From the NCBI GenBank assembly GCA_002269645.1, contig NIVC01000349.1:596849-660848 (forward strand): a stretch of 64,000 nt of DNA, read 5' to 3'. This document shows, in pieces, positions 13,698-64,000 of this stretch (the stretch's first letter is position 1; the number at the start of each line of letters is the position of its first letter). Made by a program: the position numbers and the translations under genes. The notes beneath the pieces are model-generated. The model saw only the letters and a list, made by a program, of their open reading frames with translations. It was not told the DNA's origin and searched no databases. This DNA is from Macrostomum lignano. Lineage: Eukaryota.

Positions 13698-16600
13698 TCA
13701 TTGCAGTTTCATTCTATTGAGCTTGGCGTGAGTCCAGCTGTCTAACTGCTCTACTGCTGTTTCCATGGCAACCAGACCCCCCAAGTCGGCCCCGTCTCGC
13801 AGCAACCTCGCCCTCGCCCACAGCCTCCGCTCCTCATCTTTCCTGCTGCGGTGAGCGCCGCTGTCGCTGCCGCTGCCGTTCGAAACTCGCCACCGCTTCT
13901 GCCTGACCCAGCCGATCTTCTCCTCGTCCTGCGTCTCCATGGCGACGCGTCTCTCTTTCTCGATCATCTCCATCTGCTGCAGGCTGAGCTCCACGTGCTC
14001 GCGGCAGTCGCTGTAGTGAGCCAGAGTGAGCAGCTCCTCCAAGTCCGGGTCTCCAAGCAGCTGCTCAATCCAATGATCGAATGCGATTGCAGGTGCGCGA
14101 TTGCGGAGCAGCTCAGCTTGGAGACTCCAGCTCAGGCAGCGGAAGTTCACGTACAGGTGAGAGGAGAGAGGCTGCGACAGTCTGGCTGTGAACAGAGTCT
14201 GCGTGAACTCGGGAAGGAATGGGAAGCGAGGCGGAGAGTCGCAGGGGAGGCAGAACCTCCACGCCCAGTCTGAGTCTTCTGGCAGTTTTATCTCTTTTTC
14301 TCCACTGCTTATACTCTCATCTCGAATATCCTGTGGCTTCAACCCTGACCCAACTTGATGTCTCTGCAGCTCCATGGCGAATCTCTCAGCCTCCTCAGAT
14401 TCTTCGAACTTCAAATGCGCCATGGCGGTCATGCACAGGGCGGCGCACTTGCACCACTGCAGCTCATGCAGGAGACTGAGCTGCCTCATCAGGGTGTCTC
14501 TGTCGCTCGATTCCGACTGCAGCTCGCTCACACACTGGTGCACCACACTGTACACGTCTGCAAACTTGCAAGTTTCCAGATAGTTACTTCTTTCCCTGAT
14601 CTCCGTGACAGCAGGCGGCGCTGTCAGAGGCAGCAGAGTGAACGGGTGAAAGTAGAACTTCTCTGACTGCAGAGGTCTCACGAGTCTCCTCAGCTGCTCG
14701 ACCACTCCGCCGATGTCGCTTCTCAGCTCACAAAGTCGGTCTCGAACCCTCGCCTTCGTGTTGTCAAAGTCGCCGCCGATTCCAGCGTTCTTGAAGTAGA
14801 GCGGAGCGTCGGGCATGAAGAAGTGCGGCATGCACTCATCGGGCGAAGTGTTTGAGTTGATGAAGCTCAGCATCATGTCGAGAGACTCCTTGAGCAGAGC
14901 GATCAGATATTGGGGTTGCCAAGCCTCATTCCGCCAACTATATGTGCCATGCTTTTCCAGCATGAAGAAAAGCATAGTCTTTGCATGATAGGTTTTGAGT
15001 CCAGGTGTGTCCAGAGTGAGCGGCAAGTGTCTCTTGAAGATGAACTTGATGAGTGTGAACAGCTGGCCCTGTACTGTGCTCATCTGTCTCATGATTTCTT
15101 TCTCTTGGAAGCTGAAGCTCACTCTGAGCTCGTTGGTCGAGCTCGGTCTGGTCGCTCTGACAAGGTGAACGTTCGTATCCTGATAGCTGAGAAGCCTCTC
15201 AACTCTGCTTTGACAGAAACTGCTGCAGCACTGGATCGCCTGGCAGATGTCTTGAGCAGGCCTCACACCGCATGCAGCCGCTGTCACGGTTGGTTGATTT
15301 CCTGAATTTTTTGTTTCAAATGCTTCACTTGATAATCTACTGCAATGAAATTAGCTGTAAAATTTTACATTTCTCTTCATTCTTGTCATCACAATGAACT
15401 ACCAAAACATTGTCCGGAATTTATTAAACCCAGCCTCACTCACCTGCTCCCACAGACACCTGTGCGTGGCCCTCCTTGACTTGCAGCCGAGTGGCATATC
15501 TGCAGGAGTCCTTCCATCTTTCGCAGCCACCTTCTAGGTGGAACTCTTGCCCAGCAACCAGCACAGTCCAGTCAATGTCCGAGTCTGCAGCTGTCCTGCC
15601 GTTCACTTGCACCAGACTGTTGGCCCAGCCCTCTGCGTAGCTGCCCGTTATCTGCCTGCCATCCTGTGTGAGGACTCGAGCGACTCCTTCAAGCCAGTCA
15701 GCCAGTCTCTGCTGACACTCCGCTCTCTCCCTGGTGAATCCCGCCTCGCTAAGCAGTCGATGAAGCTCTTCGCTCAGGCGCCTGTCTTGCTGGGAGTCGT
15801 CTGAGAGCTTGGAATGCTCTTCGCTGAGTTGCCTCTCATTCCGAGTGTCGTCTTTGACCCTGACAAATACATATAAAGAAGATTACGCAATTCTCAATTG
15901 GCAGTCAACTACGAGTATTAACTCTAACGTATAAAGTTTCTAAGGTTTCCATAAAGTTTCTGCTACAATTGGCAAATGAGTAAGACTGATAAGATGCTAA
16001 GTGTAGTGAGTCGCTATTTAGTTAGGCGCCGCACTAGTCAGCTGGTTTCCTCGCCCTCGCCCCAGGCTTCTGTCTGCCGCTGGGCAGTTGTCTGTCCCTT
16101 CTCGCCTGTCCTCTGGCCTGTCCCTTGCCCGTTTGCCTGTCTGTCTGTTTGTCCTCGTTTGCCCCCTTTTGTTTCGTGTTCTCGTTTTGCAGTGCCCAGA
16201 CAGCTTGGTCTGGCCTGCCTCTGTTTCGTCTCTGTTAGGCACCTCCAAATCTGGAGTGCCGTTCTGTTTTCCGATCCCAAGGTCACGAGTGCCTTCACTT
16301 GTGGGCCCTTTTCCCCTTGTCGTGTGAGCCAGTCACATGACAAGCCTCTTCTGTCTTATTAGTCCAAAGTACAATGATTTCCTCATTGTGCACTGGGCTC
16401 GTGTTTATGGGGACATCACGTGCGTCAGGACCCCCTGTCTCCTCTTCTGAGGCGGAACCCGCTCGCTTGTTGCTAAAAATAGCAACAGCGTCATCTATGA
16501 CGCGCATCGATTGCACCATTTTGTGATATGGTGCAATCGATGCTCCCTATAAATGCAGTCCCTCTCATGGCTTGGCTCAGACAAGCGCGTCCCCTTTTCT

Positions 16601-19600
16601 GCCTCACCGTTTCACCTGTCTCTCAGTTTCAAGCCAAGCTCGTGTGCCAAGTTTGAGCCTAAGTTTGAACTCCAAGACTCCCGACTTTGCGAGTGCCTGC
16701 TTCTAATTGTTCCTGCTATCTATTAGCGGGCCGGCTCAGATCGCCCGAAGCTAGCACCATCGCTCTAGCCCCGAACTAGCCCGGCAGGGACTGCTGATTG
16801 TGGACGCATCTGCTCGAGAACTGCTAGTTATTGCTAGTTATTTGCTTCTACGAGCTCAGCACCTCACCGAAGGCTGCGACTCTACGAAGCTGGTGGCAGC
16901 ACTACCTACGCTACGAGAACTAGTTTCTAAGAAACCGCCAGCTAGACGCCTCCGCCAGGAGCTAGAAGATCTGCCAGCCCTTCCGAGACAGCCCGAGGAA
17001 GCCAGCAGACACGACATTGGTGGCAGCGGTCTAGTCAACAACCACAGGCAAGAGCACTTACTTCATTGGTGGCAGCGGTGGGATTCTAAGACCTACCATG
17101 CAGGCCATCTCCAGACCAACTAAAGTGCAAATACTTCAGAAGCAACTGCCTATTTTCATTTTAGGACTTTTAGCTCCGATAATAACATTATAATCCTCAC
17201 ACTGAATTCTGTTCAAGAAGTCGGAGCACCTGCCGCTGCTCGAATCGCTGTGCCACCTGCGCACACGTCAGACCCCGACCGTCTCGATGACTCGCATCCG
17301 CTCCTCTGTCCATCAGAGCCTTGGCTGCTCGCACGTGACCGGCTTCGCACGCTCGTGACAGAGCAGTCCGACCCTGACTGTCTTTAGCACGCACTGACGC
17401 ACCGAGATCGATGAGTTTCTCAATGAGCTCGTGATGACCTTCATCAGCTGCCAGCATGAGAGCAGTGGCTCCAGTGCTGTCTGGCAGATCGACATGCTGT
17501 GTGCTGACTCGCTCATCATTGATCAGTGTGACAGCAAGAGCCACGTGTCTTTGAGAGATGGAGAGACGAAGCAGCTGTGTGATGAGAGCTGGCTGCATTC
17601 GAGAGAGGGTGTCGGTGAGAACAGAGTTCCTGCCTTCGATGGCCATTGCTGCAGTGAAGCTGAGGATGGTGCTGGATTGGAAGAGCCAGTCGGGCTCGAG
17701 GCCGAGGGATGCAACGACATCTTCATGAAGACGAGAGCAAGCCGCGACTGCATATTGGAAACGGAGATTCGCTTTGGGATCCCGACTTGAGATACACGAG
17801 ATGAAGAACTTCGCGACTTCTAGCTGACCCTCTTCAGCAGCATATTTCGCTGCCCCAATGCAGCACTGATCTCTGTTTGTTTGGTCAGCGACTGACTGAA
17901 CCAGAAACTTCACAATTTCCCACTGACCATTGCTTGCAGCAGATTTCACTGCCTCAATGCAGCACTGATCTCTGTTTGTTTGGTCAGCGACTGTCTGCAC
18001 CAGAACCTTCACAATTTCCCACTGACCATTGCTTGCAGCAGATTTCACTGCCTCAATGCAGCACTGATCTCTGTTTGTTTGGTCAGCGACTGTCTGCACC
18101 AGAACCTTCACAATTTCCCACTGACCCTCGCTTGCAGCAGATCCTGCTGCTTCAATGCAGCACTGATCTCTGTTTGTTTGATTAGCGACTGACTGAACCA
18201 GAAACTTTACCACTTCCCACCGACCCTTTCTTGCAGCAGATTTCGCTGCATCAGTGCAGCACTGATCTCTTTTTGTTTCGTCAGCGACTGTCTGCATCAG
18301 AAATTTCATAACACCGAAGTGACCTTTGCTTGAAGCAGATTTTGCTGCCTCAATGCAGCAATGGTCTCTGCTTGTTTGGTCAACGACTGTCTGCACCAGA
18401 AACTTCAGTACTTCCCACTGACCCTCACTTGCAGCAGATACTGCTGCCTCAATGCAGCACTGATCTCTGTTTGTTTGGTCAGCGACTGTCTGAACCAGAA
18501 ACTTTACCACCTCCAACTGACCATTGACTGCAGCAGATTTCGCTGCCTCCTTGCAACCGTGATCTCTCAATTTTTGGTCAGCGACTGTATGCACCAGGAC
18601 CTTCACCTCCTTCAAAACACCGTTGATTGCTGCAGATTTTGCCGCTTCAATGCAGCACTGGTCTCTCAGGCTTTGGTCAGAAATGGTCTGGACCAGAAAC
18701 TTCACCACTTTCCACTGACTGTCTCGTGCAGCAGGCCTCACTGCCTCCATGCAGCACCGATCTCTCACATTTCTGTCTGTCACAGTCTGCACAAGAAATT
18801 TCACCACTTCCCACTGATGCTCATCTGCAGCAATCAGCGCTGCCTGTAAGCAGCAGCTATCTTTGAAATTTAAGTCGCATATCAAATTAACAGCATAGTC
18901 AAGAATCTTTAAATTTCCAAATCTTGCTGCCGACTTAGCAGCCTTTGTGCAGCATTTGACCCTCATGGTTTGATCGCATGCCACCTTCAGCAGGAACTCC
19001 ACAGCCTCCCACTGGCGTTCTGTTGCAGCGGCATTCACAGCTTGTACGTAGCAAGTCTCTTTTAGCTCCGGGTGAGTAATTTCCCGAGACAATAGTTTCA
19101 ACAATTCCAGATGCCCGAACTTGGCAGCGGACTTTGCCCCTTCAGAACAGCACTGATCGCGCAGACGTTCATCAGAAATCTGCTCGAGCAGCAAAATTAT
19201 TATCTTAGAATCGCCACATTCTGCAACTCCGTTTACGAAAACCGCGCAGCAATGAAATTTCAACGTAGAATCAACCACGATCTGGTTAAAAAGCTTTAGA
19301 ACTTCATAATTTCCTACTGTTGAAGCGGCAGAGACTGCTTTCTTACAGGAAATCTTCTTTAGATCGTCTTTCATTATACAGTGCAAAAACAGATTCAGGG
19401 TGCTCCACTCGCATTTTACTGCGACATCTTCTATGATTTCAAAGAAGCACTGATCTCTTGCAAAGCCGTCTGTAACGCTGGTTACTAAAAGTTTCACGAC
19501 TTCCCATTCGGTTTTCTTAGCAGCAAATTTTGCCACCTCCAGGCAGCACCGATCCCTGTCCGGGATGTCAGAGATCTGTTGAATCAGAAACTTCATCATC

Positions 19601-20205
19601 TCTATCAGGTTCATACTCGGCGTGTCTCTGAACTCAACCATGCAGAAGTCTGCAAACATGCTCTCCTCGGTCTGCAGGTTCACGACTGTCAGCGAAGTCT
19701 CATCCGATCGCCAGTGCTGCAGAGTGGACGTCATCAAGAGTTGAACAATTTCCCACTGGTGATATGTGGCCGCAGATTTCGCTGTCTCAATGCAGAATTC
19801 GTCAATAAAGTCTCTATGTACTTTTAGATAGAGATAGCGCACGACTGACACCCGACCAAATTGTGCAGCACATTTAGCAGCCTCTAAGCATCGTCCTGCG
19901 TCCGTTAGTTGGGATCCGTCTGATTGTATAATAGAGTCGAGCAGTTTCAAACGACCAATCTTAGCGACAGTCAGCACTGATTCTTTATCAAACACTTGGC
20001 AAGCAAAAAATTCAATATTCTTCATTCGAGTGAACGCTAAAGCTGACGTCAATCGATTTTTGACAGAGCTTTTGTTAAACACCACATAAATAACAAACTG
20101 AGTGGCGGGATGCCTTCTTCCAGAAGACTTTTGTATTTGACCAGAATTCCAATTTTTAGTCCAGCGTCTGCGACCTAAGACGTAGGCCCTGGTTAGATCT
20201 GGCAT
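13698..20205 (-). CDS. Ankyrin-repeat + Mab-21/cGAS-like nucleotidyltransferase (cGLR) fusion, copy 1, 3 exons, ~1674 aa
   Basis: Exon 1 20205-17201 is the ankyrin-like array, with donor GT|gtgagg in phase 2. Exon 2 15859-15444 is absent from the ORF track and reads ...ITGSYAEGWANSLVQVNGRTAADSDIDWTVLV..., acceptor ttgtcag, donor G|gtgagt in phase 1. Exon 3 15301-13698 contains QDICQAIQC, RVSFSFQEKEIM, GLKTYHAKT and MPHFF. The total of 5025 nt is in frame. The exon 1-2 junction is inferred from phase and from copy 2. Confidence 0.8.
16318..17016 (+). mobile_element. LTR (~700 bp) of an LTR retrotransposon in intron 1 of ANK-cGLR copy 1, antisense to the host gene
   Basis: TGTCGTGT...ACACGACA 8-bp inverted ends and TATAAAT at ~16548. 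It is immediately followed by the PBS-like sequence TGGTGGCAGCGGT (17018-17030). Confidence 0.65.
17067..17086 (+). promoter_or_regulatory. Primer-binding site complementary to the tRNA-Leu 3' end
   Basis: TGGTGGCAGCGGTGGGATTC is the reverse complement of the eukaryotic tRNA-Leu 3' end (GAATCCCACCGCTGCCACCA). It is preceded by ...TTCA-T. Confidence 0.8.
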
Positions 20206-30200: not shown

Positions 30201-31649
30201 GATCAACGATTTTTCTAAAAACGGCTGGCTGCTTGCATGCCTCATAGCCAGGTGCAGCACTGTCTGGTCGTGCCTGTTTGTCCACAGCCAGCAGTTGTCG
30301 CTCAAACTGGAAGCCGCGGCTTCAATGACTTCATGACGCCCGCACTGAGCTGCATAGTGCAGGCAGGTGTTTCCGTCCTGATCGCGTAGCTTAATAACGG
30401 CCGCTTTGGCTTTCCTGACCAGTTTAACTGCCATTCCTTTGCTGCAATGCCGAACTGCCAGATGCAGCACTGATTGGCCTGTCTTGTTTTGCGATCGAAG
30501 ACAAGCCGCATTAGTCTCTGTCACCAGTGCGTCAATCTTCTTATCGCAATCAACCTTCGACAGGACCGCAAAATGAGCGTTCCGGTTTCCGTCGTTGTCA
30601 GCTTGATTCAGTATGTCCAGTCCGGCATCTTTAAACTCGTCCCTCAGCGATTCGACAGTTTGAAATCGGCAAGTCTTCAGCACAAGGTGCCACACGAGCT
30701 CGCCCCTGAAGTTGCGCATTAGCAGGCACATTTTACCGGCCACTTTTACGATTTCAATTATTACAACATCGTTGCCATCCTTCATGGCCGCATAATGAGC
30801 GCATGTGTTGCTATTGCTGTCTCGGAGGCTAATAATATTCAAGCCGGCTATTCTAATGAGCTTCTTTGACGTGTCTGGACCGCAGTACTCTAATACAATA
30901 TGCAGCACAGACTCTTTGTGATTATTATTCAAAGACAAGATTTTCTGTCTGTTGAGCAGTTGAGACACCGCGTTGTCATCTGTGCCTCTCTTTGCGACAT
31001 AGTGAGCCCAGCTGTTGCCCTCTTCATCTGTCAGATCCTGGGCCGAGCCCGCCTGGTCTAGAAGCGGCTGCAGCTCAGAACCTGCCGCATTCAGTAAGCC
31101 GATGTGCAGAACCGGTTGACCTTTGGCATTTTGCCAAGCCAAGCATTGAACTCCAATACAATCTACTGGCACTTTGATTGCATCCTTGTGCTCAATGTTC
31201 GAGGCTGCATAGTGAGGTACCGTATTGCCAAACTTGTCCTCCCTCTCTAAATACGCGGCTGGCTTGGATACACCAGCCAGGATTTCGTGCAAATCGTCCG
31301 CGGTTTGCTTGGCAGCGGCCAGATGCAGCGGAGTGATTTGCAAGCAATCGGCCGTCTCCAGACACCGATGGCCAGAGCGCTTAATTATCCGCTTGAGCAG
31401 GCCTGCACCCTGGGGGCTCAGCGCGGCATAGTGCGCCGCTGTCCGCTCGTCGGAGTCCTGCTCTAGCGGCACGTTTTGCTTGAGCTTTGCGGCCAGTTCG
31501 CTGGCAGCACTGAACTGACCTCGCTTCGTTAGGGCTAGTAGGTGACGGACATCTGAGCTGTCGATCTCGATTGGCTCATCGACCTCGGCTAGACGGCGGC
31601 TGTCGATCAGCTTTAACAGGTCGATCACGTCAATGCTGTTGCCAGCCAT
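27067..31649 (-). CDS. Ankyrin-repeat TRP cation channel, 3 exons, ~1466 aa
   Basis: Exons 31649-27570, 27480-27284 and 27190-27067 (phases 0 and 2; total 4401 nt in frame). Many ankyrin repeats (TPLHLAA, TSLHFAC) are followed by six hydrophobic helices, YFLDIFNYFD, S6 LNLLIALF, a TRP-box-like IWRRSYFYMLLEY and a C-terminal helical tail. Intron 2 holds a (GATA)n tract. Confidence 0.88.
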
Positions 31650-36664: not shown

Positions 36665-51459
<14,795 letters not shown>

Positions 51460-52061
51460 GCTCGTTGAATCTAAGAGTTAAACTACTGCGAGTAGAATAC
51501 AAGGAAAATGCAAATCCGTCTAGTCCTTTGTAAGCGATCGCTTCTCTAGCTAGTGCCTTTTTAGGCGAATGCGTCCGTCATAAACTTTTGTTCATTCTAG
51601 CTCGCTAAGTTTCAGCTCGTAATCTTATTGAAAGTCACAATTTTCAAATTCAAACTTTGTACAGTTTTGAGTTCAAATTATGTTATTAGCTAAAAAAATA
51701 AACAAGCAATTCAGCACACACAATGCAGCTTTGTCACTTAACAATCACTGGTCTGTAATTTCCAGCCCATCATGCTTCGAAAGCAAAAAAATAAATGATT
51801 TAGTTCTTTTTATTTGCTTTTTAAAAGTAAAAATTTATGATAGGTTCTTTAAAAGAAAAGAAAACAGTTTCTCTAAAGAAGGTTAAATTTGATGTTTAGA
51901 CATGATGATTGAGTTTCTTTAGATTTCCATCGAATAAGGAATAAACTTTATGAAGCTACTGAAGTTTTCCGAACTTGAATAGTTGTCAAGGGTGCCGCTC
52001 CACTTTCTGAGCAAACACTGACAATGCTCCGAGTCAGCAGTTCCTCAGTTCCTCAGCCCAG

Positions 52062-55000
52062 TTACGACCGACACAGAGCCACACTGAGGCTGCGATGCAG
52101 AGCCTCGAAGTTGACATAAATTTCATTGCCGCTTATAAGCAGACAGGTCGAGAAAATATTGTTCACGGACAAAAAGTTTAACTTTATTGGTGAATCAAAT
52201 TTCAAGTAGAATTTCCAAGCAGAGTCATGACTTCTCAGGTGCTGCCAGACGAGCTCCTTGGTTGGTTCAAACTGGGACAGCTCTTCCTTCCAGCTGATGC
52301 CCCGGTGGACCTCGGGCTGCCGGCTACTCAGCAGCACCTCTGACGCAGCTTCCAGACGGCCGAACTTGATGCAAGACAGAGCTCGCAGAGTCTCTCGGCT
52401 TTTGCTGGCGCAGTCAGGCAGGCGCGCAATGACATCATCTAAGACAGATCTACAGTCGGAGCTTGTGTCGTCTTCGTCTAGCATAACAAGTGCTTCTTTC
52501 ACGTTGTCATAAATACTGAGATACTGAATTTCCAAAGCAAATTTTTCAATAGAAGCTTCAATTAGTGGCTTGGGTTTCTTTTCCAGCGTTGGTAGCAGTA
52601 GAAATGGATGAAAACTGAAATTTTCAGAATCAGGAATGCTGGCAAGACCATCGTTGAACTCTGCCAGTATGTACGGCAGTTGGTGAATCAACTCAATTAG
52701 GCATTGAGCAATTTTCATCGCTGTGTCCCGACTTTGTCCTTGCAAGTACAAGGCAGCATCACTCAGAAAGAAGTGCCTCATGATTTGTCCATCGAATGTC
52801 TTCGAATTGCAACTCTGCTCAACGTAGTTTAGCATCATCTGCAAGGCATGTCGAGTGAGACTGAAGAGATTCTCCGGTCTCCACTGATCAGCCGGTGTCG
52901 CTTCAAGCATTCGGAACAGGAGAGTTTTGGCGTGATATGTTTTCAAGCCCGGCACACAGTTGCTTATAACTCGTTTAAACAGATATTTGATAATAACGAA
53001 CAGCTGACCTTGCAGTGTCGTGAGATTTTGCATCAGCTTCCTCTCTAAAAAGGCTGTGCTCACGCGGAACTGCGAGCCAGCAGATCCTGGAGATGCGGCA
53101 CGTACCAAATGACAGGGCGATGAGGTGATCTCTTGCCGGAGCAAGTCCAGCACCCTCTGTGATATGTTGGAGTCATTTTGAGACTGCAACACTGCCATTG
53201 GTGGATGGCAGCACAGACTGAGGGCGGTCTCCAGGTGAATCGCTGGCCCCAAAGATTTGTTGCCAGTTTCGACATGTTTTGTAGAACAATTTGACGCTAA
53301 AAATAAGATAAAACCGTCAACTTTGGGCTTTAACAGAGATTAAAGTTATAAAGCAACAGTATAGACTAGAAGGTTTACTTAAGAACGTTGCAATTCCACT
53401 TACCAAAATCATCGCAGGTAATTTCACCGTTGCAGTATTCAACAGTTTTTTTAACGCTATCAGAATCAATTTGCCTGCAGCGGCAATAGTTCTTCAAGTG
53501 AAACAGTTGGTTTGTGTCAATCATCAAATAGTCGATGTCGGAGTCTGGATCGATGTCGCCATTTAACGAGGCCATGCAGCTGCCCCAGCCTTCAGCAAAG
53601 CTGCCCATAACAAATATTTTATTCTCTTTATCACACCGACTGCGCGCAGAGACCAGCTGGTGCAGAACCTCGGCAGCCGCAGTCTGCAGTGCCGCCCTGG
53701 GCCTGGTGAAGCCAGCACGGAGCATTGACTGGTGCACCAGCAGACTCTGCTCACTTGCTGTTGACCTGATCAAGGATGGAAAGTTTATCGTCAGTTATTT
53801 TATTTTCACTGGAGGGAAGTTGCAGCCGTGAGAAGGTACACATGTATGCAGTCATGCCTATTCGCTGACCCCTGAGCACCCCATTTTGCCTCTCCGGTGT
53901 CGAGAATGCGGAGCATTTCATCTGTGAATGCCCCCGGACTTTACTGAAGGACGAGCTGACACCTACTTCGGCCCAAACCTGAGAATCTCTGCCACCTCAT
54001 CCGCAACCAAAGGGCTACCGGGCGAGCACTATTCACCTCCTGGACTCTCTGGAGGGAGATTGCGCTATGGATATTGGCACCACCGGATCTCCCTGCGAGA
54101 CACCGCAGCACCAGCTGCCCGTGGTCGCCAGGGGTTAGTGGAATGGAATGCTAGGAACCCCCTGCGAAATCCTCCGCATTCTGGTGCAAGCATCTCAACG
54201 AAATCTACTACTGGCCCGCTCGGACTTACGCCGGAAAATAATTATCAACCGAGAGTTTCATGGTCGAACGGTAACTTGTCAACCTATCTAGAACCTTCCT
54301 GTGGCCATTCAGTGCGGAAATCAACATCGGCGTTATTCCGTCGTGAGCCTTCAACTCGGGGACGGCTCCGGCAGCCAGTAGCAGATCCACCGTGTTTGTG
54401 TGGCCCTCTCGCGAAGCAGCGAGCAGCGCCGAGCAGCCGGTTGAGTCTGTGAGATTCATGTCGATCTGAGGAACGCTCAACAAAATTTTTACCGAAGCCG
54501 CGTGACCAGCTTGTGACGCCAGGTGCAGAGCTGTGCACCCGCTGCTTAGCCGAAGGTTCACGTCGGCCAGGGCGACTTTAGCGAGCAGTTGGACAATTCG
54601 ATGGTGGCCCAACTGACTGGCGATGTGAATCGGTGCCGCGCCTTCCGGATGCGACGTGGCATCCGCATCCGCGTTCACTTCAACCAGAGCACGCGCAATC
54701 TTCCAGTGGTTCTCCTGCGCCGCTGTGTACAGAGCTGTTGTGCCCAGCTCGCCAATTTGATTAACGTCAACTTGAGCTTTAATGAGGCTGAGTACTATTG
54801 GCAGCTGGTTGCAATGTACGGCTACGTGAAGCGCTGGCTGAATTACGGAAATACCACAGTCCAAATTTGGATTTGCTCCGAGTTTTAGCAAACTGTCCAC
54901 TATAGACCGATCGCCCAGGAAGAATGCACCATAGAGCGGTGTGCAGAGGTGTGCCGTTTCTGGTTGGACAGCTGCCTTCGCCTTGATGAGTTCCTGCACC

Positions 55001-56012
55001 ACCAACTTGCGTCCATTTTGTACCGCAGCGTACAAAGGAGTGCTGCCGTTCAGCATGGCCTGATCGATGTCCGCCATGGCTTGGACCAGTGCCTGCACTA
55101 TCTCAACATGGCCCTCCTGCGATGCGATGTACATTGGCGTAGCACCGCTGAACTCGGCAAGATTGACGTCAGGAACTCCGAGCTCCAACAAGCAGCGAAC
55201 AATCTGACGGTGGCCGAATTGCGTCGCGATGAGCAACGGAGTTGCACCATCAACTTGCTGAATATTGACGTCTGCGGCTGCCCGACTGAGCACCTCGACA
55301 ACCTCCGCGTGGCCTTCCTGTGCAGCTGCGTAGATGGCAGTCCTGCCTCGCTCCTGTTGCAGGTCGAGGGTTGTTTGAGCTTTGAGCAGCGCAGCCACCA
55401 CTTGCCGATGACCATTCTGAGCAGCGATGTACATTGGCGAGCAGCCGTCAGTTTTCTGCGCGTCAACATCGGCCATAGCTGAGACCAGCTGGGTGACAAT
55501 TTCCCAGTGTCCGTTCTGAGCGGCCATGTAGAGCGGCGTGGACCGGACGTCTGTTCTGGACTGATTCACGTTGGCCTGAGCCTCGATGAGCAGCTGTACA
55601 ACAGCGCGGTGCCCGTTCTGAGCAGCGACCCAGAGCGGCGTGCAGCCGAGTTTCTGAGGCAGATCGACGTTCGCACCCTGCAGAATCAAGCTGCTGACCA
55701 ACCTGTCGTGACCATAGGCAGAGGCCACAAAAAGTGGAGATTCTCCGTGACTCGATTGACGATTGACGTTCACTTCTGGCTGCTTTGAGGACCGGGTGAG
55801 CAGCTGAGCGGCCTGTAGTTGCCGGTGATGCAGGCCAGATGTAGCGGCGACAGGCAGCTGCCGTTAAAATTGAACATCTGATCAGGAGACTGACCACCGG
55901 TCAGATGCGCCCTCAGCTTGTCGGGGTCCGCCTGAAGCACCGACTGCAAGAAGTCCTCATTGGGAGTGTCGGCTACTCGCGTTAAGTGCGAAATTTGCGT
56001 CCACTGACTCAT
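52062..56012 (-). CDS. Ankyrin-repeat + Mab-21/cGAS-like nucleotidyltransferase (cGLR) fusion, copy 2, 3 exons, ~1126 aa, with a 1-nt frameshift near 55811
   Basis: Exon 1 56012-54230 holds canonical ankyrins (donor GC|gtaagt, phase 2). Exon 2 53765-53404 reads VMGSFAEGWG...DPDSDIDY (donor G|gtaagt, phase 1). Exon 3 53296-52062 contains RVSTAFLERKLM, GLKTYHAKT and MRHFF. Exon 1 is one base short of frame; restoring a G at AGG[G]CC gives NYRAAQLL. It may be a pseudogene or a sequencing error. Confidence 0.8.
53880..54212 (+). mobile_element. 3' fragment of a non-LTR retrotransposon in intron 1 of ANK-cGLR copy 2
   Basis: One + frame reads VENAEHFICECP, the H-x3-4-CP half of the C-terminal CCHC knuckle of LINE ORF2. 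It is followed by a UTR-like stretch ending in CTACTACT. Confidence 0.5.
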
Positions 56013-57862
56013 GCTTAAAGTCCTGGACTGAATCAGCAGCCTATATAATTGGTCTTTTCTGAAAAGAAAGGTCGCTTCTTCGAGTGACCAACAGTTAAAA
56101 AACTAGATTTTAAAGCTCTGATTCCATTCAGAAATTCAACCGCAATTTCTGTGAAAAATTTAAACATAAATTTAAATTCAAATTTGCGAGCTAAGAATAC
56201 AAGATTCAATCCTTTAAAAATGTTTAAAATAGGTTTTCGACTTAAGCAATTCTTTATTATGTCTTATTGCTAAAAATACAGGTGAAATCAGCGAAATTTG
56301 TGTACTTTAATTAACACCATAATATTATTAAAATAAGTTTAATTGAATGAGTTTCTGACTCGAAAAGTGGCTGAAGACAACATATAATAAAGAAATAAAT
56401 ATTTAATTAAATAATAGTAATTAATTTAATTAAAAAGTAGTTGATAGTATTAAATAAATATAACTAGATATAGACTTATTTTGTTTCAGTAGTAAAATTC
56501 TTTTTGTTATGTTGTCTAACATTTTAAAGCTGCAGTAAAGAATCGGTTTACGTGAGTATCAGAAAATATAATCTTCGCAATTCATGGACCACTATAGCAG
56601 ATATTCGAATAAGTAAAATATCCTTCCACTTTTTATTTTATTTAACGGCTCATCATGAAAGCTAAATAACTAAAAAATTGTTCATAACGGAATTAAAACA
56701 AGAGAGTAGCTGCTGTTAAAGCAAAAATTTATTTTAGTTCCTTGTCAGTGGTAATATTCACATTTGCAGTCATGCTTTGCGCACTTATTTCGCTGAAAAA
56801 GTACGAGTTAAATATACACTATTACTTGATAAAAAGATCTTTCGTAACAAAAAGAAATTATTGTGATTGCTTATGTTAGCTTTTTCACAGAAATGTTTTG
56901 TACAACCCTTAAATTTCGTTTTGCAATGCTTTAAATCTTCTTTTTTGTTATACTACTGTTAATTATAACACCAAAATAAGCCGCAAATATGCTGTAGAAC
57001 CCAATAAACAATATTATTTGAACTTTTAGAAGAAGTAAGCTGAGCTAGTTTCAAGAAACCTCTTCTTGTATTATATTGCAAGTCTGATGAAAATACGAGC
57101 GGAAATTAAAGCACATCCGAATGTAATTCACTTTAAGGTGCTAATACATGTTGGATATGTTAGACGAATAACGTGTAAAAGAGACGAAAAATTAAAAGTC
57201 GAGTTCGTTAAAACTATTTTTCTAAATATGCTACTGTACTAAACGTACGTAGATACGAGAAAAATGTACATGCATTCTTAGTGTACATGCACATGTATAC
57301 CCATGCAGCAATCTGATATGGCCACAATGTCGGCCAACGCGGTTTTCGACGTCTATCGACGAGTGAGTGGCAAATGAGTACTTTTACAGTACAGCGATGG
57401 TTCAGTAGACGACCTTACATGTATGACGTTACGTACGTTATCTAATGTAAATGTAATGTAATGTACGTATTTGTCAGCGACGTTGATAATACTTGTCTAC
57501 AGACGTCGGACTGCGGTACCAGCATGGTACATATGTATATATGCATGCAATATATAAGATGCGAAAGTATAATTCGCATTTCCCCCAATGAAAGAAAAGT
57601 TTGATTTTGGGTGGAGCCGCTATAGCTAAAGGATCTTGCATGGGGAGACGAGATTTCTTGACGAGAGTTTATTTTGTGATCGAGCTTCGGCCCGATATCG
57701 CGGTGAGGACTGCGCACGGGTTTGAGAAGAGAGAAAACTGTTTCTGAAGCACTTGGGGGGAACTCATGGAGGGTCGAGAATTGGGACGGCAGTGAGCGTG
57801 CCGGCGAAATTGCTTTCACTTTGAAGAGTTGCCGCGTGCGTGCAGGCCGGCCTCGAGTTTGT

Positions 57863-57986
<124 letters not shown>

Positions 57987-58727
57987 GTCGCACAGAGCTG
58001 GGAGAAGGAGTCCAGATCGACCTCGTCGCGCTCTCTATCCTAAGCAAAGCTCTCGGCCGCGGGCTTGGGAGAAAAACAGGGAGCTGGGTAAGAGAGGAGG
58101 GAGAGAGAGCCGAGAGTAAGGGGCGATTGAGGTGAGGATAGATTTTCTAAGCTCAAGGCCTGCCAGCTAAAAGTACTGCTTTCCCGCAGTTGATTGGCCT
58201 GGGGGCAGTGACGATCAGGTCGGGACGGGGATGGATGCAGCGGACGAGAGGGAAGGCCGGAGACGTGGAGGTCTTGGCTGAGGGGCTGAGGGGGGATTTT
58301 GGACTTGGGGGAGGGGATAAACGAGGGTAGACGGTGCAGGAGCGAGTCAGTTGGGCTTTGGGGGGAGGGACTGCTTTGCTAACAGGGGGACAGCTGAAGG
58401 AGAGAGAAATTTAAGGGACAGGGAGGTGGACGGAGAACCCCAACTGAACCTATAGGTTCGTGTCCGCCTCCCTCTCTCGGACATTTCCCCTCCTTTCCTC
58501 CTCCTTCTTCTTCTGCGCGCCCGGCCTCTGCCAACCTATACATAAGCCCTTTTCTTAAGTTAACCAAGCCAAGAAAAGTTTTCTTTTCCTCAATTCTTTC
58601 TCCTGGCAACTTTGTAGGCCGACCGACTGGCGAGGTAAGGCTTAGCGCCTCTGTGATCACATTCACTTGTTCGCATCTTGAATTAATATTAAAGCAGCTG
58701 TTGATTCCGTCAGCTTTTTTAGACAAG

Positions 58728-60425
58728 ATGGCCAGCGCCACTCAGGCACCAGAAGTCATGATGAGCGTCAACGGCGGAGCCAGCAGCAGAGACGAACCGT
58801 CCATCACCCTGTCGCGATACTCTGAATACGGCCTGCTGATCTGCATTGGAATTGTCGGCATCATCGGCAACTTCGGCATTGCACTGGTCATTCTGTTCGT
58901 CCGCCGTCTGCGAAAGGCCGCGAACGCCTTCATGTTCCACCACTGCCTGCTGGACCTGCTGAAGTCGCTCTACTGCCTGATCTTTGCCAACAGCCTGCTG
59001 CACGACCAGGAGCCGATGTTCTGCAACCTTCTTGGCGGCTCCTTCATCGTGTGCGTGACCAGCACGGCCTTCAACATCCTGGCCATGGTCATGAGCGAGG
59101 CTTACGTCTTTGCCGACCTTAGCGCTGGGGTGAAGGACAGCGGCAACTACTGCTGCATCCTGTTCAGCATCAGCACCATCTGGTTCGCCAGCATCATTCT
59201 CAACTTGGGCGTCGCCTTCCTGCCTGGCAATCCGAGCTACATCCAGAAAGTCGGTCACTGCACTTTTAGCTACGGCGAGACCCGGAACTACGTGCTCCAC
59301 GTGCTGTGGATCATCCTGGTGACGTTCGCCATGAGCCTGGCCATCATGTACTTGAAGAAGCTTCGCCAGGACATCAAATCCAACTCGACCAGCGGAGTTC
59401 TGCAATCGGATCTGCTGCGCATCATCCGCCAGTCCATCGCTGGCCCGTCCGACCTCAGCCCGTCCGGCCACCCGCAGCTGCAGCAGCAGATGATGGCCGA
59501 TCAGTGCGTCGACGACGTGGCAGAGAGGGCCCTGTTGAAGAAAGTGGAGCGATTCGCCATGACCAAACTGTACACCCTGCTGCTCATGACGGCTCTGTTC
59601 GTGCTGTTCTGGTATCCGCTGTTCATCCTCACCCTGGTCGATCCGAACTTCCACGGACAGCCGGTGGCCTACAAGGCCCTGACAATCTTCGCCTGCTGCA
59701 ACGCCGCCGTCAACCCGTTCGTGTTCATCTGCCTGATCAGCAAGCGTGGCTGCTGTCGCACGGAGATGCCGCGCCTCCGGCTGGCCAAGGGCAACAGGGA
59801 GCTCTTTCAGGAGCCCGGCGGCATCGCCACCCTCAACCGGTACGGCCGCGGCAGCCGCTCAAAGAAGAACATCCTGCAGGCAGAGATGCAGTCGCCGCCA
59901 CCACCACCTCCGCCGCCGCCGCCTGTGCACCAGCCGGTGGCGACTCTGATGCAGAGCGGCTCGTTCGACGACTCCAGAGGCCGGGCCAGCTTCCGGCATC
60001 AGCACTCGTCCTCTTCGCTGCGACAGTCGCACCATCAGCAGCAGCAGCACCCGCAGCACTCGCTGATCTCTGACGCAGCCGATCATCCCGGCATCTACAA
60101 CGAGTACTTCGCCATGCACCCGCTGCCGCCGCCGCCTCCGCACTCGGTGCCGCCGCCGCCGCCGCCCCCGGCCGCCTACCTGCACCGCATGGAGTCCTTC
60201 GAGCGGTCGCAGTCGCCGCCGCCTCCGCCGATGCCACCGCCGCCTCCGCCACCGGGGATGGCGGGAGCCACGTCGTCAACTGCAACCGCAAGTCCGCGGA
60301 GACACATGCAGCAGCAGCAGCAGCAGCAGCAGAGGTCGCAAGGAACCTGTGGACACCGCCGTCTGGTGCGCAGTCGACATTGTAGAATTGCAAGACTCAG
60401 CAGCAAGGCCCATGCAGTCATATAA
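58728..60425 (+). CDS. Class A (rhodopsin-like) GPCR, possibly SREB/GPR85-like, with Pro/Gln-rich tail, ~565 aa
   Basis: The ATG at 58728 follows a likely 5' UTR intron (gtaagg at ~58636, tttttag at ~58722). There are seven hydrophobic segments with TM1 GN, TM2 HCLLD, TM3 EAY in the DRY position, TM6 FWYP and TM7 NPFVF. The SREB-like assignment is from recall only. Confidence 0.88.
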   Translation: MASATQAPEVMMSVNGGASSRDEPSITLSRYSEYGLLICIGIVGIIGNFGIALVILFVRRLRKAANAFMFHHCLLDLLKSLYCLIFANSLLHDQEPMFCNLLGGSFIVCVTSTAFNILAMVMSEAYVFADLSAGVKDSGNYCCILFSISTIWFASIILNLGVAFLPGNPSYIQKVGHCTFSYGETRNYVLHVLWIILVTFAMSLAIMYLKKLRQDIKSNSTSGVLQSDLLRIIRQSIAGPSDLSPSGHPQLQQQMMADQCVDDVAERALLKKVERFAMTKLYTLLLMTALFVLFWYPLFILTLVDPNFHGQPVAYKALTIFACCNAAVNPFVFICLISKRGCCRTEMPRLRLAKGNRELFQEPGGIATLNRYGRGSRSKKNILQAEMQSPPPPPPPPPPVHQPVATLMQSGSFDDSRGRASFRHQHSSSSLRQSHHQQQQHPQHSLISDAADHPGIYNEYFAMHPLPPPPPHSVPPPPPPPAAYLHRMESFERSQSPPPPPMPPPPPPPGMAGATSSTATASPRRHMQQQQQQQQRSQGTCGHRRLVRSRHCRIARLSSKAHAVI

Positions 60426-62085
60426 ATGATGAGCAGCATGTATATTAAACAGGACAAAGAACAACAAATAGTTTCCAATTATTCGTAGCATGCTTATTAG
60501 TGTTGCCTAAACTGTCACAACATTTATGGAAACAAGAAAGACATGAAAAAATAGTTTCTATCCCATATCCATAATATAGACAAAGTAGGTTGAGGCCCCA
60601 GCGAGTTGTTGGGCAGATATTTTATTTTAACAATAAAATCGAAGTTATCAACATATTCACGCACTTTTTTTCTGCGTACATTGTTCATTAACTACTCTCG
60701 CTTACAGTCTCTGAAGCCTGTGTTTGTTGTAAGTTAGAAGCTCTTTAGTCAATAAAATGCACTTCATTTTGCACACTATATAATTATATACTTTGTTTTA
60801 ATCAAAGGTCAAACAATCCGTATACTGTTTTAATTTTGAAATTTTAGCACGTTGATTTTAACAAATATTTCTCTTTCTCAGAAAGTAAGCGTAATATTTA
60901 AAAGTAACTTTGAAATTCTATTTCATATTTGAAACTAACAATAATGAATAGTTTGCTTATATACAATAGTTTATAAACGATTTTCAATGCACCGTTTTTA
61001 CAATATTTTAGTGTGGAATTTAAGCACTATGTACTTATGAAACACGATGTGCTGTATATTCTCCAATAACGAAAAATTTATTTACTGCACATATTCGAAT
61101 ATTACATCAAAATTTCATACATTTTACATGTTATACATTGTAGGTATATCATTCACTTGGCAAAATAAATTATGATTATAGCTTCAGACGAATCAAAATG
61201 AATCACGCTGACAAATATTCTCACTGTATCTTTGTTATAAGTAGTATCGTTTCGTTTTAATTTAATTAATTTCGTGAATTTCATTTTCGTTTTAATTAAA
61301 TAGCCAATAAGGTAAAAGCTACGTTTCTAGCTAGTAGTTTTTTGGTAGTCAAATCTAACTAAAATATTTTTTGTTGTGAACTGTAATAACTGTGAACCTG
61401 TTGCAAAACAGTTCAAAAGTACACCCAGTTCTTAACAGTGCATGTACATCGCAGAAGTACATGTTGCGTAAAAAGTGACATCTTTTTTCAGCAAATAAAC
61501 TTTACATTTCTCAAAGTTGCAGCACATTTTCCAAGAAACAATTTCATCATTATTGATTTTTTGTTATAAATTTGCATTTTTTAATGGCCACAATTCGAAT
61601 GAGCATTTGCTGGACTGGGTGAGTCATGTATATTTCTACTTTACATGCATGTACCTGACGTCTACATAATTTCCTAGCAAACTTCTCTGCAAACTTGCAT
61701 GAAAATGTACAGTGTAAAATACAATATATGACTCGATTTTCGGCACTGCAACTTCAACACACACTGGAGACATTGGGAAGTGAGATTGAGAGGGAGGCCT
61801 CCTACTCGTAAAAACTGAGACCGCCTCAGGCCCGACTTGTGAAGGAAAAACTCGGCAATTAACACTTACAGAAGCTGCTCCCCTGGGGCTTTGAGGACTC
61901 GCGGATCGCGATGAGGCTGCTGGCACGCACGCGCCCCAGCCGATCTTATAGATTTCTCGCGACGGGGATGCTGGCTCGACTTCTGCGGGAAGCTCGGACT
62001 GCTGGCTGTTTTAATTAAAATTCCGCGAGCGCTGCTTCTGCCAGTGCTCCGAACTTTTTTCCACGATTGAGCAACCCTGATTTCT

Positions 62086-62880
62086 CACCCCTAAATCTGC
62101 CCATATCTCACCCTTAAATCTGCCCATGTCTCACCCTAAATATGCTTATATCTCACCCCTAAATCTGTCCATATCTCAACCCCAAATCTGTCCATATCTC
62201 ACCCTAAATCTGTCCATATCTCACCCCTAAATCTGTCCATATCTCACCCCTAAATCTGTCCATATCTCACCCCTAAATATGTCCATATCTCACCCCTAAA
62301 TCTGTCCATATCTCACCCCTAAATATGCCCATATCTCAGCCCTTAAATCGGTCCATATCTCACCCCTAAATATGCCCATATCTCAGCCCCTAAATCGGTC
62401 CATATCTCACCCTGAAATCTGTCCATATCTCACCAAATCTGCCAATATCTCACCTAAATCTGTTCATTATCTCTCAGCTCTAAATCTGTCCATATCTACC
62501 CCTAAATCTGTCATATTCACCCTAAATATGTTCATATCTCACCCCCAATCTGTCCATATCTCATCCCCCCAAATATGTCCATATCTACCCTCAAATCTGT
62601 CCATATCTCACCCTAAATATGTCCATATCTACCCCCAAATCTGTCCATATCTCACCCCTAAATATGTCCATATCTCACCCCTAAATCTGTCATATCTCAC
62701 CCTAAATATGTCCATATTTCACCCCTAAATCTGTCCATATCTCACCCCTAAATATGTCCATATCTCACCCCTAAATATGTCCATATCTCACCCTAAATCT
62801 AACAATTTCTCACCCTAAATCTGCCCATATCTCACCCCTAAATATGTCCATATCTCACCCCCTAAATATGTCCATATCTC
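62086..62880. repeat. 23-bp minisatellite
   Basis: Unit CTCACCCCTAAATCTGTCCATAT. Confidence 0.93.
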
Positions 62881-63109
62881 AGAGCGTGTCTCAGATTCCG
62901 CCAGATAAAAACTTGAAGCACCGCACTGACAGTCGGTCGATATTGGTGTGACGATTCACAAGAATATTGATCTGCACAAGACAAAGCAGGCAGGCTTGTT
63001 TTGCTCAAGGTCCATGACACCATGCACTTTGCAGGATGCAGGAAGAAACCTGATATGAAGTATATTTAATATAAATATTCGATACTGTGTATACAATACA
63101 CAAAATGAT

Positions 63110-63905
63110 CTACACGAATGAAGAATAGAAATTGCTAATCTATCTCACGAATGAAGAACTAGAATGGAAATATCTCATAATGACTATATATCTATCTCAC
63201 GAATAAGAACTAGAATGGATTACTAATCCATCTCACTAATGAAGGACTAGAATAGATTGCTAATCTATCTCACTAATGAAGAACTAGAATGGATTGCTAA
63301 TCTATCTCACGAATGAAGAACTAGAATGGATTACTAATCCATCTCACTAATGAAGGACTAGAATAGATTGCTAATCTATCTCACTAATGAAGAACTAGAA
63401 TGGATTGCTAATCTATCTCACTAATGAAGAACTAGAATGGATTGCTAATCTATCTCACTAATGAAGGACTAGAATGGATTGCTAATCTATCTCACCAGTG
63501 AAGAACTAGAATGGATTACTAATCTATCTCAATAATGAAGGGTATTAATGGATTGCTAATCTATCTCACTAATGAAGGGTATTAATGGATAGCTAATCTA
63601 TCTCACTAATGAAGGATTGAATGGATTGCTAATCCATCTCACTAATGAAGGGTATTAATGGATTGCTAATCTATTCTCACTAATGAAGGATTAAAATGGA
63701 TTGCTAATCCATCTCACTAACGAGGGGTATTAATGGATTGCTAATCTATCTCACTAATGAAGGATTAGAATGGATTGCTAATCGATCTCACTAATGAAGG
63801 TATTAATGGATTGCTAATCTATCTCACTAATGAAGGATTAGAATGGATTGCTAATCCATCTCACTAATGAGGGTATTAATGGATTGCTAATCTATGTCAC
63901 CAATT
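63110..63905. repeat. 37-bp minisatellite
   Basis: Unit GCTAATCTATCTCACTAATGAAGGATTAGAATGGATT. Confidence 0.93.
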
Positions 63906-64000
63906 AAAGATTACAATAGACTGCTTGCCGCAAAATAACTAAATCGTTGGCAAGATCATAATTCATTGAAGAAGCAATTAAACGTTCTGAAGCGAGAGTA

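What the first reader, a model, noticed from the sequence alone, without database searches (positions are those of the whole stretch)
52062..56012. Second ANK-cGLR with identical intron phases but a different repeat module: sensor swapping by exon shuffling
Copy 2 lies 32 kb away on the same strand. It has the same three-exon plan (phase-2 intron just before the NTase exon, phase-1 intron after DSDID) and clearly homologous NTase exons (AGFTR, GS[YF]AEGW, DSDID, QGQLF, GLKTYHAKT). Its N-terminal exon encodes canonical TPLY/GH ankyrins rather than the Cys-rich repeats of copy 1. Inference: a modular receptor family in which one large repeat exon is exchanged in front of a conserved signalling cassette, comparable to diversified NLR-type immune receptors.
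Basis: partly seen in the sequence, partly recalled or inferred. Interest (0 to 1): 0.8.

Follow-up and report, generated by a model that had tools for sequence, protein, structure and literature searches.

The report
Second flatworm ankyrin-cGLR gene, probably degenerate
This is a second ankyrin-repeat/cGAS-like (cGLR) gene of the flatworm Macrostomum lignano, from a large and already catalogued family. It arose by ordinary gene duplication rather than exon swapping, and this copy shows signs of having lost its enzyme activity.

Summary
The gene is real. A three-exon ankyrin + Mab21/cGAS-like gene lies on the minus strand at 52062-56012. It has a phase-2 and a phase-1 intron, as does the copy at 13698-20205, and all the quoted motifs are present.

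Four points change the picture.
1. Exon 1 has a one-base frameshift at 55814/55815.
2. The position that holds the third catalytic Asp in 125 of 137 family domains is His here.
3. The conserved C-terminal tail is cut off by stop codons.
4. The "Cys-rich repeats" of copy 1 are themselves ankyrin repeats (Pfam Ank_4, E = 3.7e-24), amplified in place as a 99-bp tandem array.

The window is Macrostomum lignano. The family has at least 91 clusters at 50% identity, and 36 of 41 long representatives carry ANK. Both introns recur in paralogues of both clades. N- and C-terminal similarities are concordant (Spearman 0.80). No pair of paralogues shares an ANK exon while differing in the NTase, and no outside donor of the ANK exon exists.

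Whole-gene duplication and divergence therefore explains the data, and exon shuffling is not supported. ANK-cGLR fusions, M. lignano's included, are already listed in Li et al. 2023. Interest is low to moderate.

The parts
54230..56012 (-). Exon 1 of copy 2: start codon at 56012 and about 16 ankyrin repeats. It ends with 2 bases of a codon (phase-2 donor GTAAGT at 54229).
   Evidence: Pfam Ank_2 E = 5.2e-89 and Ank E = 9.8e-82.
55814..55815 (-). One-base deletion (frameshift) inside the second ankyrin repeat: GGCAACTAC^AGGCCGCT. The intact reading would be GNYQAAQLL.
   Evidence: CDS length is 2 mod 3. L001 has an extra C here. P0002 reads ITGNYQAAQLLT.
53766..54229 (-). Intron 1 (464 bp, phase 2, GT..AG). 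An in-frame TAA follows at once if it is left unspliced.
   Evidence: The junction is used in models P0001 and P0002. There is a matching phase-2 intron in paralogue P0004.
53404..53765 (-). Exon 2: N-terminal helix (AGFTR), GS activation-loop motif (53585-53605) and DSDID catalytic acids (53531-53545).
   Evidence: Family alignment A1.
53297..53403 (-). Intron 2 (107 bp, phase 1), in the codon for Ala of DDF|A|SNC.
   Evidence: The same codon position and phase occur in copy 1 (G of GAG|NQP), P0004 (PGY|A|SSPA) and P0025 (GAG|SQPA).
52062..53296 (-). Exon 3: rest of the NTase core, the Mab-21_C domain and a helical C-terminal extension. The stop codon is at 52062-52064.
   Evidence: Pfam Mab-21_C E = 2.7e-5, 24.7 bits against a cut-off of 24.1. 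Family profile against PDB: cGAS E = 5.4e-7. Foldseek: human cGAS E = 1.8e-6.
53235..53237 (-). His codon (GPAIHLETA) at the family's third catalytic Asp position. A Glu two residues later is unique to this lineage.
   Evidence: D in 125 of 137 aligned family domains, H only in copy 2, P0001 and P0002.
52005..52061 (-). Possible remnant of the lost C-terminal tail, in frame after two stop codons (LG*GTEELLTRSIVSVCSE).
   Evidence: Weak tblastn match to the copy-1 tail, E = 0.054. Clade A paralogues have 56-84 aa after the YxNF motif; copy 2 has 14 (EALHRSLSVALCRS; paralogue counts).
13698..20205 (-). Copy 1: an intact 1674-aa ANK-cGLR of the other clade. Exons are 20205-17201, 15859-15444 and 15301-13698. 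Exon 1 holds a 99-bp tandem array (17837-18817) that encodes the CC-type ankyrin repeats.

Best explanation
Copy 2 is a diverged paralogue in a very large, Macrostomum lignano-specific expansion of ankyrin-repeat cGAS-like receptor (cGLR, Mab21-fold nucleotidyltransferase) genes.

Origin. The ancestral gene of the family already had an N-terminal ANK exon, a phase-2 intron in the linker and a phase-1 intron inside the NTase domain. Copies 1 and 2 descend from it by whole-gene duplication and long divergence (about 30% identity in the NTase). The two ANK exons differ because ANK arrays evolve fast. In copy 1's clade the TPLH motif changed to CCxEA, and that repeat was then amplified in place by tandem duplication.

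Mechanism (inferred). In active family members the ANK array would act as the ligand- or partner-binding, or autoinhibitory, module. The NTase would make a cyclic oligonucleotide signal.

State of copy 2 (inferred from sequence). It has probably lost catalysis. The third catalytic Asp is His, the tail is truncated and the ANK exon carries a frameshift. It is either a decaying gene or a non-catalytic family member.
For: - Organism and family: all close hits are M. lignano. The locus is collinear at 98.2% with NIVC01000038.1.
- cGAS fold: the AF2 model has pLDDT 78 and pTM 0.83. The top Foldseek PDB hits are human cGAS, Cv-cGLR1, MB21D2 and MAB21L1, at E about 1e-6. The family profile hits cGAS at 5.4e-7 and Sp-cGLR1 at 1.5e-4.
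- Ancestral fusion: ANK is present in 36 of 41 long representatives.
- Inherited introns.
- Both exons are ANK: the Cys-rich repeats alone hit Ank_4 at 3.7e-24 and Ank_2 at 6.4e-22. hhalign against copy-2 repeats gives 95.4% probability.
- In-place amplification: a 99-bp unit in 9.9 copies and a 297-bp unit in 3.1 copies.
- Concordance: Spearman 0.80, and no pair with a similar N-terminus and a dissimilar C-terminus.
- No donor for the ANK exon.
- Degeneration: the frameshift, His at the Asp position, Ala at the second Ser of RVSxS and the short tail.
Against: - dN/dS between the window and its 98% relative L001 is 0.48 (one-sided p = 0.029). The gene has therefore been under some constraint.
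- All six single-base indels between the window and L001 in exon 1 sit in 2-nt homopolymers. Each assembly has its own set. They could be assembly or polishing errors in a repeat-rich exon.
- A Glu unique to this lineage lies two residues after the His, on the same predicted strand. It might partly replace the lost Asp.
- Canonical ANK arrays are 35-40% identical to almost any other ANK array. The concordance test therefore has little power for copy 2's exon, and one ancient replacement at the split between the two clades cannot be excluded.
- No expression or enzymatic data were available.
Confidence: 0.65

Rival explanations
1. The family diversifies by exchanging one large repeat exon in front of a conserved NTase cassette (exon shuffling through the phase-2 intron). 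Copies 1 and 2 would be two outcomes of such swaps.
For: - The N-terminal exon is far more variable than the NTase cassette across the family.
- A phase-2 intron separates the two parts in every locus examined.
- P0020 and P0036 have an NTase 51-57% identical to clade B but an ANK region of another type.
Against: - Both exons are ANK.
- 36 of 41 lineages carry ANK.
- No pair of 27 paralogues shares a similar ANK exon with a dissimilar NTase.
- No outside donor exceeds the generic ANK background.
- Identical phases are expected from simple inheritance.
- P0023 and P0037 show the intermediate state (C-terminal part 65% identical, N-terminal part 32%) that faster divergence of the ANK part would produce.
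- The one apparent non-ANK N-terminus (P0027) is a junk gene model.
Confidence: 0.1
2. Copy 2 is a fully functional ANK-cGLR sensor. On this view the frameshift is an assembly error, the His/Glu pair still supports catalysis or metal binding, and the short tail is a tolerated variant.
For: - dN/dS is 0.48 overall and 0.32 in the ANK exon.
- The indels sit in homopolymers and differ between assemblies.
- The GS and DxD motifs, the RVS...E motif and the fold are intact.
- A Glu at +2 is unique to this lineage.
- Splice sites are intact.
Against: - The neighbouring 3.7-kb TPR ORF shows 0 indels between the same two assemblies, against 6 in the 1.8-kb ANK exon (p = 0.0012).
- Copy 1 and the other long ORFs of the window are intact, so this assembly is not generally error-prone.
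- His at a position that is Asp in 91% of family domains is confined to this lineage.
- Two stop codons precede what looks like the old tail.
Confidence: 0.22

Closest known systems
ANK-fused cGAS-like receptors (cGLRs) catalogued by Li et al. 2023 (bioRxiv 10.1101/2023.02.22.529553 / PMC9980059; Fig. 1C, Table S2)
   Same: - The architecture is the same: N-terminal ankyrin repeats followed by a cGAS-like NTase.
- Table S2 lists M. lignano proteins PAA67649, PAA58690, PAA68676 (= P0025 here), PAA86972 and PAA45980 with Ank_2 domains. It also lists ANK-cGLRs from many other accession series, whose species were not looked up here.
- Five M. lignano NTase domains (#89-93) were cloned for their screen. 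Two of them belong to copy 1's clade.
   Different: - Copy 2's lineage has His at the third catalytic acid, a shortened tail and a frameshift in this window.
- 'Mlig008770', part of the source name of the database relative P0001, was not found in the supplementary files as held; three of the seven files were cut when stored.
- None of the five M. lignano constructs carries an 'active' label in Table S3, so no ligand or product is known for the family.
cGAS / Drosophila cGLR1 / Cv-cGLR1 / Sp-cGLR1 (solved structures)
   Same: - The fold is the same (Foldseek E about 1e-6, TM normalised to the target 0.5-0.58).
- The GS loop, the [DE]h[DE] motif, the R-x-S-x-S...E motif and the Mab-21_C helical lobe are shared.
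   Different: - Sequence identity is only 11-15%.
- There is a roughly 250-aa family-specific helical C-terminal extension.
- The N-terminus is a long ANK array rather than a short unstructured or absent one.
- Pfam's NTase-core model PF03281 does not match.
Catalytically inactive Mab21 proteins (MAB21L1/2)
   Same: They have the cGAS fold with an incomplete active site. MAB21L1 is among the structural hits.
   Different: Copy 2 is not an orthologue of MAB21L1. It is a recently derived member of an otherwise catalytically complete, lineage-specific family.
Diversified repeat-based immune receptor families (NLR, VLR)
   Same: A large lineage-specific expansion, with a variable repeat domain joined to a conserved signalling domain.
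   Different: - No NACHT/NB-ARC or LRR domains are present.
- No evidence of module exchange or somatic assembly was found.
- An immune role is untested in this animal.

Membership tests
cGLR (criteria of Li et al. 2023) | Predicted structural homology to cGAS | tested here: met
   AF2 model with pLDDT 78 and pTM 0.83. All top Foldseek PDB hits are cGAS, cGLR, MB21D2 or MAB21L1 (E 1.8e-6 and up, probability 1.0). Profile against PDB sequences: cGAS 5.4e-7.
cGLR (criteria of Li et al. 2023) | G[S/G] activation-loop motif | tested here: met
   GSFAEGW at 53585-53605. G and S are present in 120-121 of about 123 aligned family domains.
cGLR (criteria of Li et al. 2023) | [E/D]h[E/D] catalytic pair | tested here: met
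   D-I-D within DSDID at 53531-53545.
cGLR (criteria of Li et al. 2023) | Third catalytic [E/D] 50-90 residues downstream | tested here: not met
   - At the homologous column (RPAxDxxxA in paralogues, TDLIPAF in PAA86972) copy 2 has His (GPAIHLETA).
- The column holds D in 125 of 137 domains and H only in this lineage.
- A Glu at +2 satisfies the bare spacing rule but is not at the homologous position.
- Copy 1 has the Asp.
cGLR (criteria of Li et al. 2023) | Synthesis of a nucleotide second messenger, activated by a ligand | not testable with these tools
   This needs recombinant protein. The five M. lignano constructs in Li et al. Table S3 carry no 'active' label.
Pfam Mab-21 (PF03281 / PF20266) | Score above the gathering cut-off | tested here: inconclusive
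   Mab-21_C (PF20266) scores 24.7 bits against a cut-off of 24.1, which is barely above it. There is no PF03281 hit for either copy.
Ankyrin repeat proteins | Pfam ANK models above the cut-off; 33-residue repeat | tested here: met
   Copy 2 exon 1: Ank_2 at 293 bits, Ank at 265 bits, 33-aa register. Copy 1 Cys-rich repeats alone: Ank_4 at 84.7 bits, Ank_2 at 78.4 bits.
Exon shuffling / module exchange | Incongruent histories of the ANK exon and the NTase exons | tested here: not met
   Spearman 0.80 between N- and C-terminal similarity over 27 paralogues. No pair has a similar N-terminus and a dissimilar C-terminus. Power is limited for canonical ANK arrays.
Exon shuffling / module exchange | Identifiable donor of the exchanged exon outside the family | tested here: not met
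   In a search of 5.8 billion proteins, the best hits after copy 2's own lineage are generic ANK arrays at 25-41% identity.
Processed or unitary pseudogene | Disabling mutations confirmed in the organism's DNA; neutral evolution | tested here: inconclusive
   One frameshift in the window, five others in L001, and two stops before the tail remnant. However, dN/dS is 0.48, the indels are of homopolymer type, and reads were not available.

The most novel reading that the evidence does not exclude
M. lignano's roughly 90-lineage ANK-cGLR family may be a real diversified receptor repertoire in which the fast-evolving ANK array sets ligand specificity. This would include the CC-type repeat, which may sense metal or redox state. 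Members that have lost the catalytic Asp, such as copy 2 (about 9% of family domains), would be kept as non-catalytic decoys or regulators of active paralogues rather than being dead genes.
Probability: 0.12. Interest if true: 0.6.

Novelty: new member of a known kind. Interest (0 to 1): 0.27.

Why it matters
cGLRs are a major class of innate immune sensor in animals, and most flatworms have lost them (Li et al. 2023). M. lignano instead carries a very large ANK-fused expansion whose ligands and products are unknown.

This case shows how the family diversifies. It does so by whole-gene duplication, fast ANK divergence, tandem amplification of repeats within an exon, and occasional loss of the catalytic site. 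A dedicated exon-swapping mechanism is not needed. That removes the most exciting part of the claim.

For annotation, copy 2 should be flagged as a possibly non-functional or non-catalytic member.

Tried and rejected
- Pfam's NTase-core model (PF03281) does not match either copy. Membership therefore had to rest on a profile search of PDB sequences and on fold comparison.
- I compared family profile A1 with five cnidarian cGLRs by hhalign, hoping for an independent mapping of the third Asp. Only the C-terminal lobe aligned (80% probability). The mapping therefore rests on the within-family alignment, the TDLIPAF motif of PAA86972 and column conservation.
- I looked in copy 1's intron 1 for a mini-exon like the one in P0025. 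Nothing convincing was found.
- A 62-sequence MAFFT alignment was useless for column counts, because a tandem-domain reference misaligned. It was replaced by an alignment to the A1 profile built with HMMER (hmmsearch).
- P0027's non-ANK N-terminus looked like a domain swap but is a junk gene model.
- The linker and the 3' end of exon 1 are too variable, even within clade A, to serve as a marker of orthology.
- Literature searches for Macrostomum with cGAS or STING found nothing specific on this family beyond Li et al..
- I considered and rejected rescue of the frame by an internal start or a short intron. There is no ATG in the second frame before Met 163, and the ankyrin repeat is continuous across the shift.
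Full report
WHAT IS THERE

The window is eukaryotic, with GC-rich exons in AT-rich, satellite-laden DNA. On the minus strand, an ATG at 56012 opens an ankyrin-repeat reading frame that runs to a GTAAGT donor at 54229.

A second exon (53765-53404) encodes ...AGFTR...GSFAEGW...DSDID... and ends at another GTAAGT. A third exon (53296-52062) encodes the rest of a Mab21/cGAS-like domain, including QGQLF and GLKTYHAKT. The first intron is phase 2 and the second is phase 1.

The gene at 13698-20205 on the same strand, 31.9 kb away, has the same plan and phases. Its exons are 20205-17201, 15859-15444 and 15301-13698. The NTase parts of the two genes are 29.8% identical over 541 residues.

1. The three exons of copy 2 sum to a length of 2 mod 3. 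The second ankyrin repeat jumps frame at GGCAACTAC^AGGCCGCT (55814/55815), and inserting one base restores ...ITGNYQAAQLLT.... Both the M. lignano Mlig_3_7 locus and a UniProt model have that base.
2. The position that is Asp in the family motif RPAxDxxxA is His in copy 2 (GPAIHLETA, codon 53235-53237). The same motif reads TDLIPAF in the M. lignano cGLR PAA86972 (the canonical D-L-V-P-A form, from my own knowledge). In an alignment of 137 family domains to the family profile, this column is D in 125 and E in 1. It is H only in copy 2 and its two database equivalents.
3. The second Ser of the RxSxS motif, which HMMER aligns with cGAS 'RLSFS', is Ala only in this lineage.
4. Copy 2 stops 14 residues after the YVNF motif, where clade A paralogues continue for 56-84 residues. 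A weak, in-frame remnant of the tail follows two stop codons.

ORGANISM AND FAMILY

All close protein hits are from the free-living flatworm Macrostomum lignano. Window 47383-64000 is collinear at 98.2% identity with contig NIVC01000038.1 of assembly GCA_002269645.1.

A profile of the NTase part finds 91 clusters (50% identity) at E <= 1e-30 among 1.84 billion representatives. All nine strong hits sampled are M. lignano, and a weak one is a mussel.

IS IT A cGLR?

Pfam gives only a borderline Mab-21_C hit, 24.7 bits against a cut-off of 24.1. The family profile, however, hits cGAS chains in the PDB at E = 5.4e-7 and Sp-cGLR1 at 1.5e-4.

An AlphaFold2 model of the copy-2 C-terminal 526 residues (pLDDT 78, pTM 0.83) retrieves human cGAS, oyster Cv-cGLR1, MB21D2 and MAB21L1 as top structural matches. 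These have E about 1e-6 and TM 0.5-0.58 on the target.

The fold, the GS loop and the DxD pair meet the criteria of Li et al. 2023. The third acidic residue at the homologous position does not. Copy 1 meets all the sequence criteria.

ARE THE TWO N-TERMINAL EXONS DIFFERENT MODULES?

No. Copy 1's repeats have a strict 33-residue period (RDQCCIEAAKSAASNGQWEVVKFLVQTVADQTN). Taken alone they hit Pfam Ank_4 (3.7e-24), Ank_2 (6.4e-22) and Ank (1.8e-18). Their profile aligns with the profile of copy-2 repeats at 95.4% probability.

They are ankyrin repeats in which TPLH has become CCxEA. They form a 99-bp (and 297-bp) tandem DNA array at 17837-18817, which indicates amplification in place. Three canonical ankyrin repeats follow them in the same exon.

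TESTS OF EXON SHUFFLING

(a) Distribution of N-terminal domains. Of 41 long representatives of the family, 36 carry ANK. The exceptions include a tandem double NTase (P0038), one protein with a caspase domain and one with EGF/DSL domains. The EGF/DSL case may be a fused gene model, but this was not examined. The fusion therefore predates the radiation of the family.

(b) Introns.
- In paralogue P0004 (clade A, locus L002) a 105-bp phase-2 intron precedes the NTase exon. An 80-bp phase-1 intron splits PGY|A|SSPA, the codon homologous to copy 2's DDF|A|SNC.
- In P0025 (clade B, locus L003) a phase-2 intron follows LRLLNPT(E). This is one residue from copy 1's LRLLEQNS(V).
- In P0025 a 42-nt phase 2-2 mini-exon follows, and a 17-kb phase-1 intron splits GAG|SQPA, as in copy 1.
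- Shared phases are therefore inherited family characters, not a signature of exchange.

(c) Concordance. Over 27 paralogues, normalised N- and C-terminal similarity correlate (Spearman 0.80).
- Copy 2's ANK exon is closest to the same clade (P0004, P0008, P0031, P0032, P0034) that is closest in the NTase. P0004 and P0008 give 38-39% identity in the ANK part and 40-41% in the NTase.
- Copy 1's ANK exon is closest to clade B (64-91% identity in the ANK part for most members, 75-85% in the NTase).
- No pair combines a similar ANK exon with a dissimilar NTase, which exchange among paralogues would produce.
- The ANK part diverges faster than the NTase (P0023: 65% C-terminal, 32% N-terminal). This accounts for P0020 and P0036, whose ANK no longer resembles clade B's.

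(d) Donor. Searching the ANK exon against 5.8 billion proteins returns its own lineage (95% and 87%) and then generic ANK arrays from all kingdoms at 25-41% identity. No donor gene exists.

The same result also shows that canonical ANK arrays are about 35-40% identical to almost anything. Test (c) is therefore weak for copy 2, and a single ancient replacement cannot be formally excluded.

IS COPY 2 DEAD?

The evidence is mixed.

For decay:
- The frameshift, the His, the Ala and the lost tail all point that way.
- Between the window and L001, the 1.8-kb ANK exon has six one-base indels, while the adjacent 3.7-kb TPR ORF has none (p = 0.0012).

Against decay:
- All the indels are in 2-nt homopolymers and differ between assemblies, as errors would.
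- dN/dS between the two sequences is 0.48 (14 synonymous and 22 non-synonymous changes, one-sided p = 0.029).
- A Glu unique to this lineage sits two residues after the His.

I conclude that catalysis is probably lost. Whether the gene is a pseudogene or a retained non-catalytic paralogue needs reads, RNA and an enzyme assay.

COMPARISON WITH WHAT IS KNOWN

Li et al. 2023 (bioRxiv 10.1101/2023.02.22.529553) describe ANK-cGLR as one of the recurrent domain architectures (Fig. 1C). They state that most platyhelminths lack cGLRs.

Their Table S2 lists M. lignano ANK-cGLRs, including PAA68676, which is P0025 here. They also cloned five M. lignano NTase domains for their screen, none of which is labelled active. 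The family and the architecture are therefore already catalogued. What is added here is the gene-structure evidence for how the family diversifies, and the degenerate state of this particular copy.

VERDICT

- The shuffling interpretation is not supported.
- The gene is an ordinary, probably degenerate member of a known kind.
- Interest is 0.27.

Noticed in passing
window 17837-18817 (inside copy 1 exon 1): A 99-bp (9.9 copies, 80% matches) and 297-bp (3.1 copies) tandem DNA array encodes the CC-type ankyrin repeats. The last three protein repeats are almost identical, which indicates recent amplification in place within an exon.
   Followed up: partly
window 27543-31649 (-): A single 1368-aa ORF with N-terminal ankyrin repeats (Ank_2, E = 8.5e-25) and a hydrophobic C-terminal part. 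It may be a TRP-like channel, but no channel domain was detected by Pfam at E <= 0.01.
   Followed up: partly
window 47788-51459 (+): A 1223-aa ORF with TPR repeats (TPR_12, E = 7.3e-18), convergent with copy 2 and ending about 600 bp from its 3' end. It differs from the Mlig_3_7 locus by 68 substitutions and no indels.
   Followed up: partly
window 58653-60425 (+): A rhodopsin-family GPCR ORF (7tm_1, E = 6.3e-15). The Mlig_3_7 copy has five indel columns, four of them near the 3' end.
   Followed up: no
window 21822-25175: ORFs that read like retroelement integrase and reverse-transcriptase fragments lie between the two cGLR genes. They were not scanned against Pfam.
   Followed up: no
window 42278-47642: A 34-bp satellite of about 92 copies (43395-46529), with GC skew down to -0.79. 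It is flanked on both sides by arrays of the same 42-bp repeat (42278-42953 and 47383-47642).
   Followed up: no
window 10623-12234 (-): Two adjacent ORFs whose sequence (FPDVTICN...) looks like the start of a DEG/ENaC-type sodium channel gene. They were not scanned.
   Followed up: no
family representatives (alignment A6; P0038): One M. lignano family representative carries a caspase domain (Peptidase_C14, E = 2.7e-25). One carries EGF/DSL domains and may be a fused gene model. P0038 has two NTase domains in tandem (GS motifs at 69 and 815).
   Followed up: no
L003 7582-24686: The conserved phase-1 intron of paralogue P0025 (PAA68676) is about 17 kb long. The same intron is 80-143 bp in copy 1, copy 2 and P0004.
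   Followed up: no
window 53229-53231 (Glu two residues after the His): A Glu at +2 from the lost catalytic Asp occurs only in the copy-2 lineage (3 of 137 family domains). It could be a coincidence or a partial compensation.
   Followed up: partly
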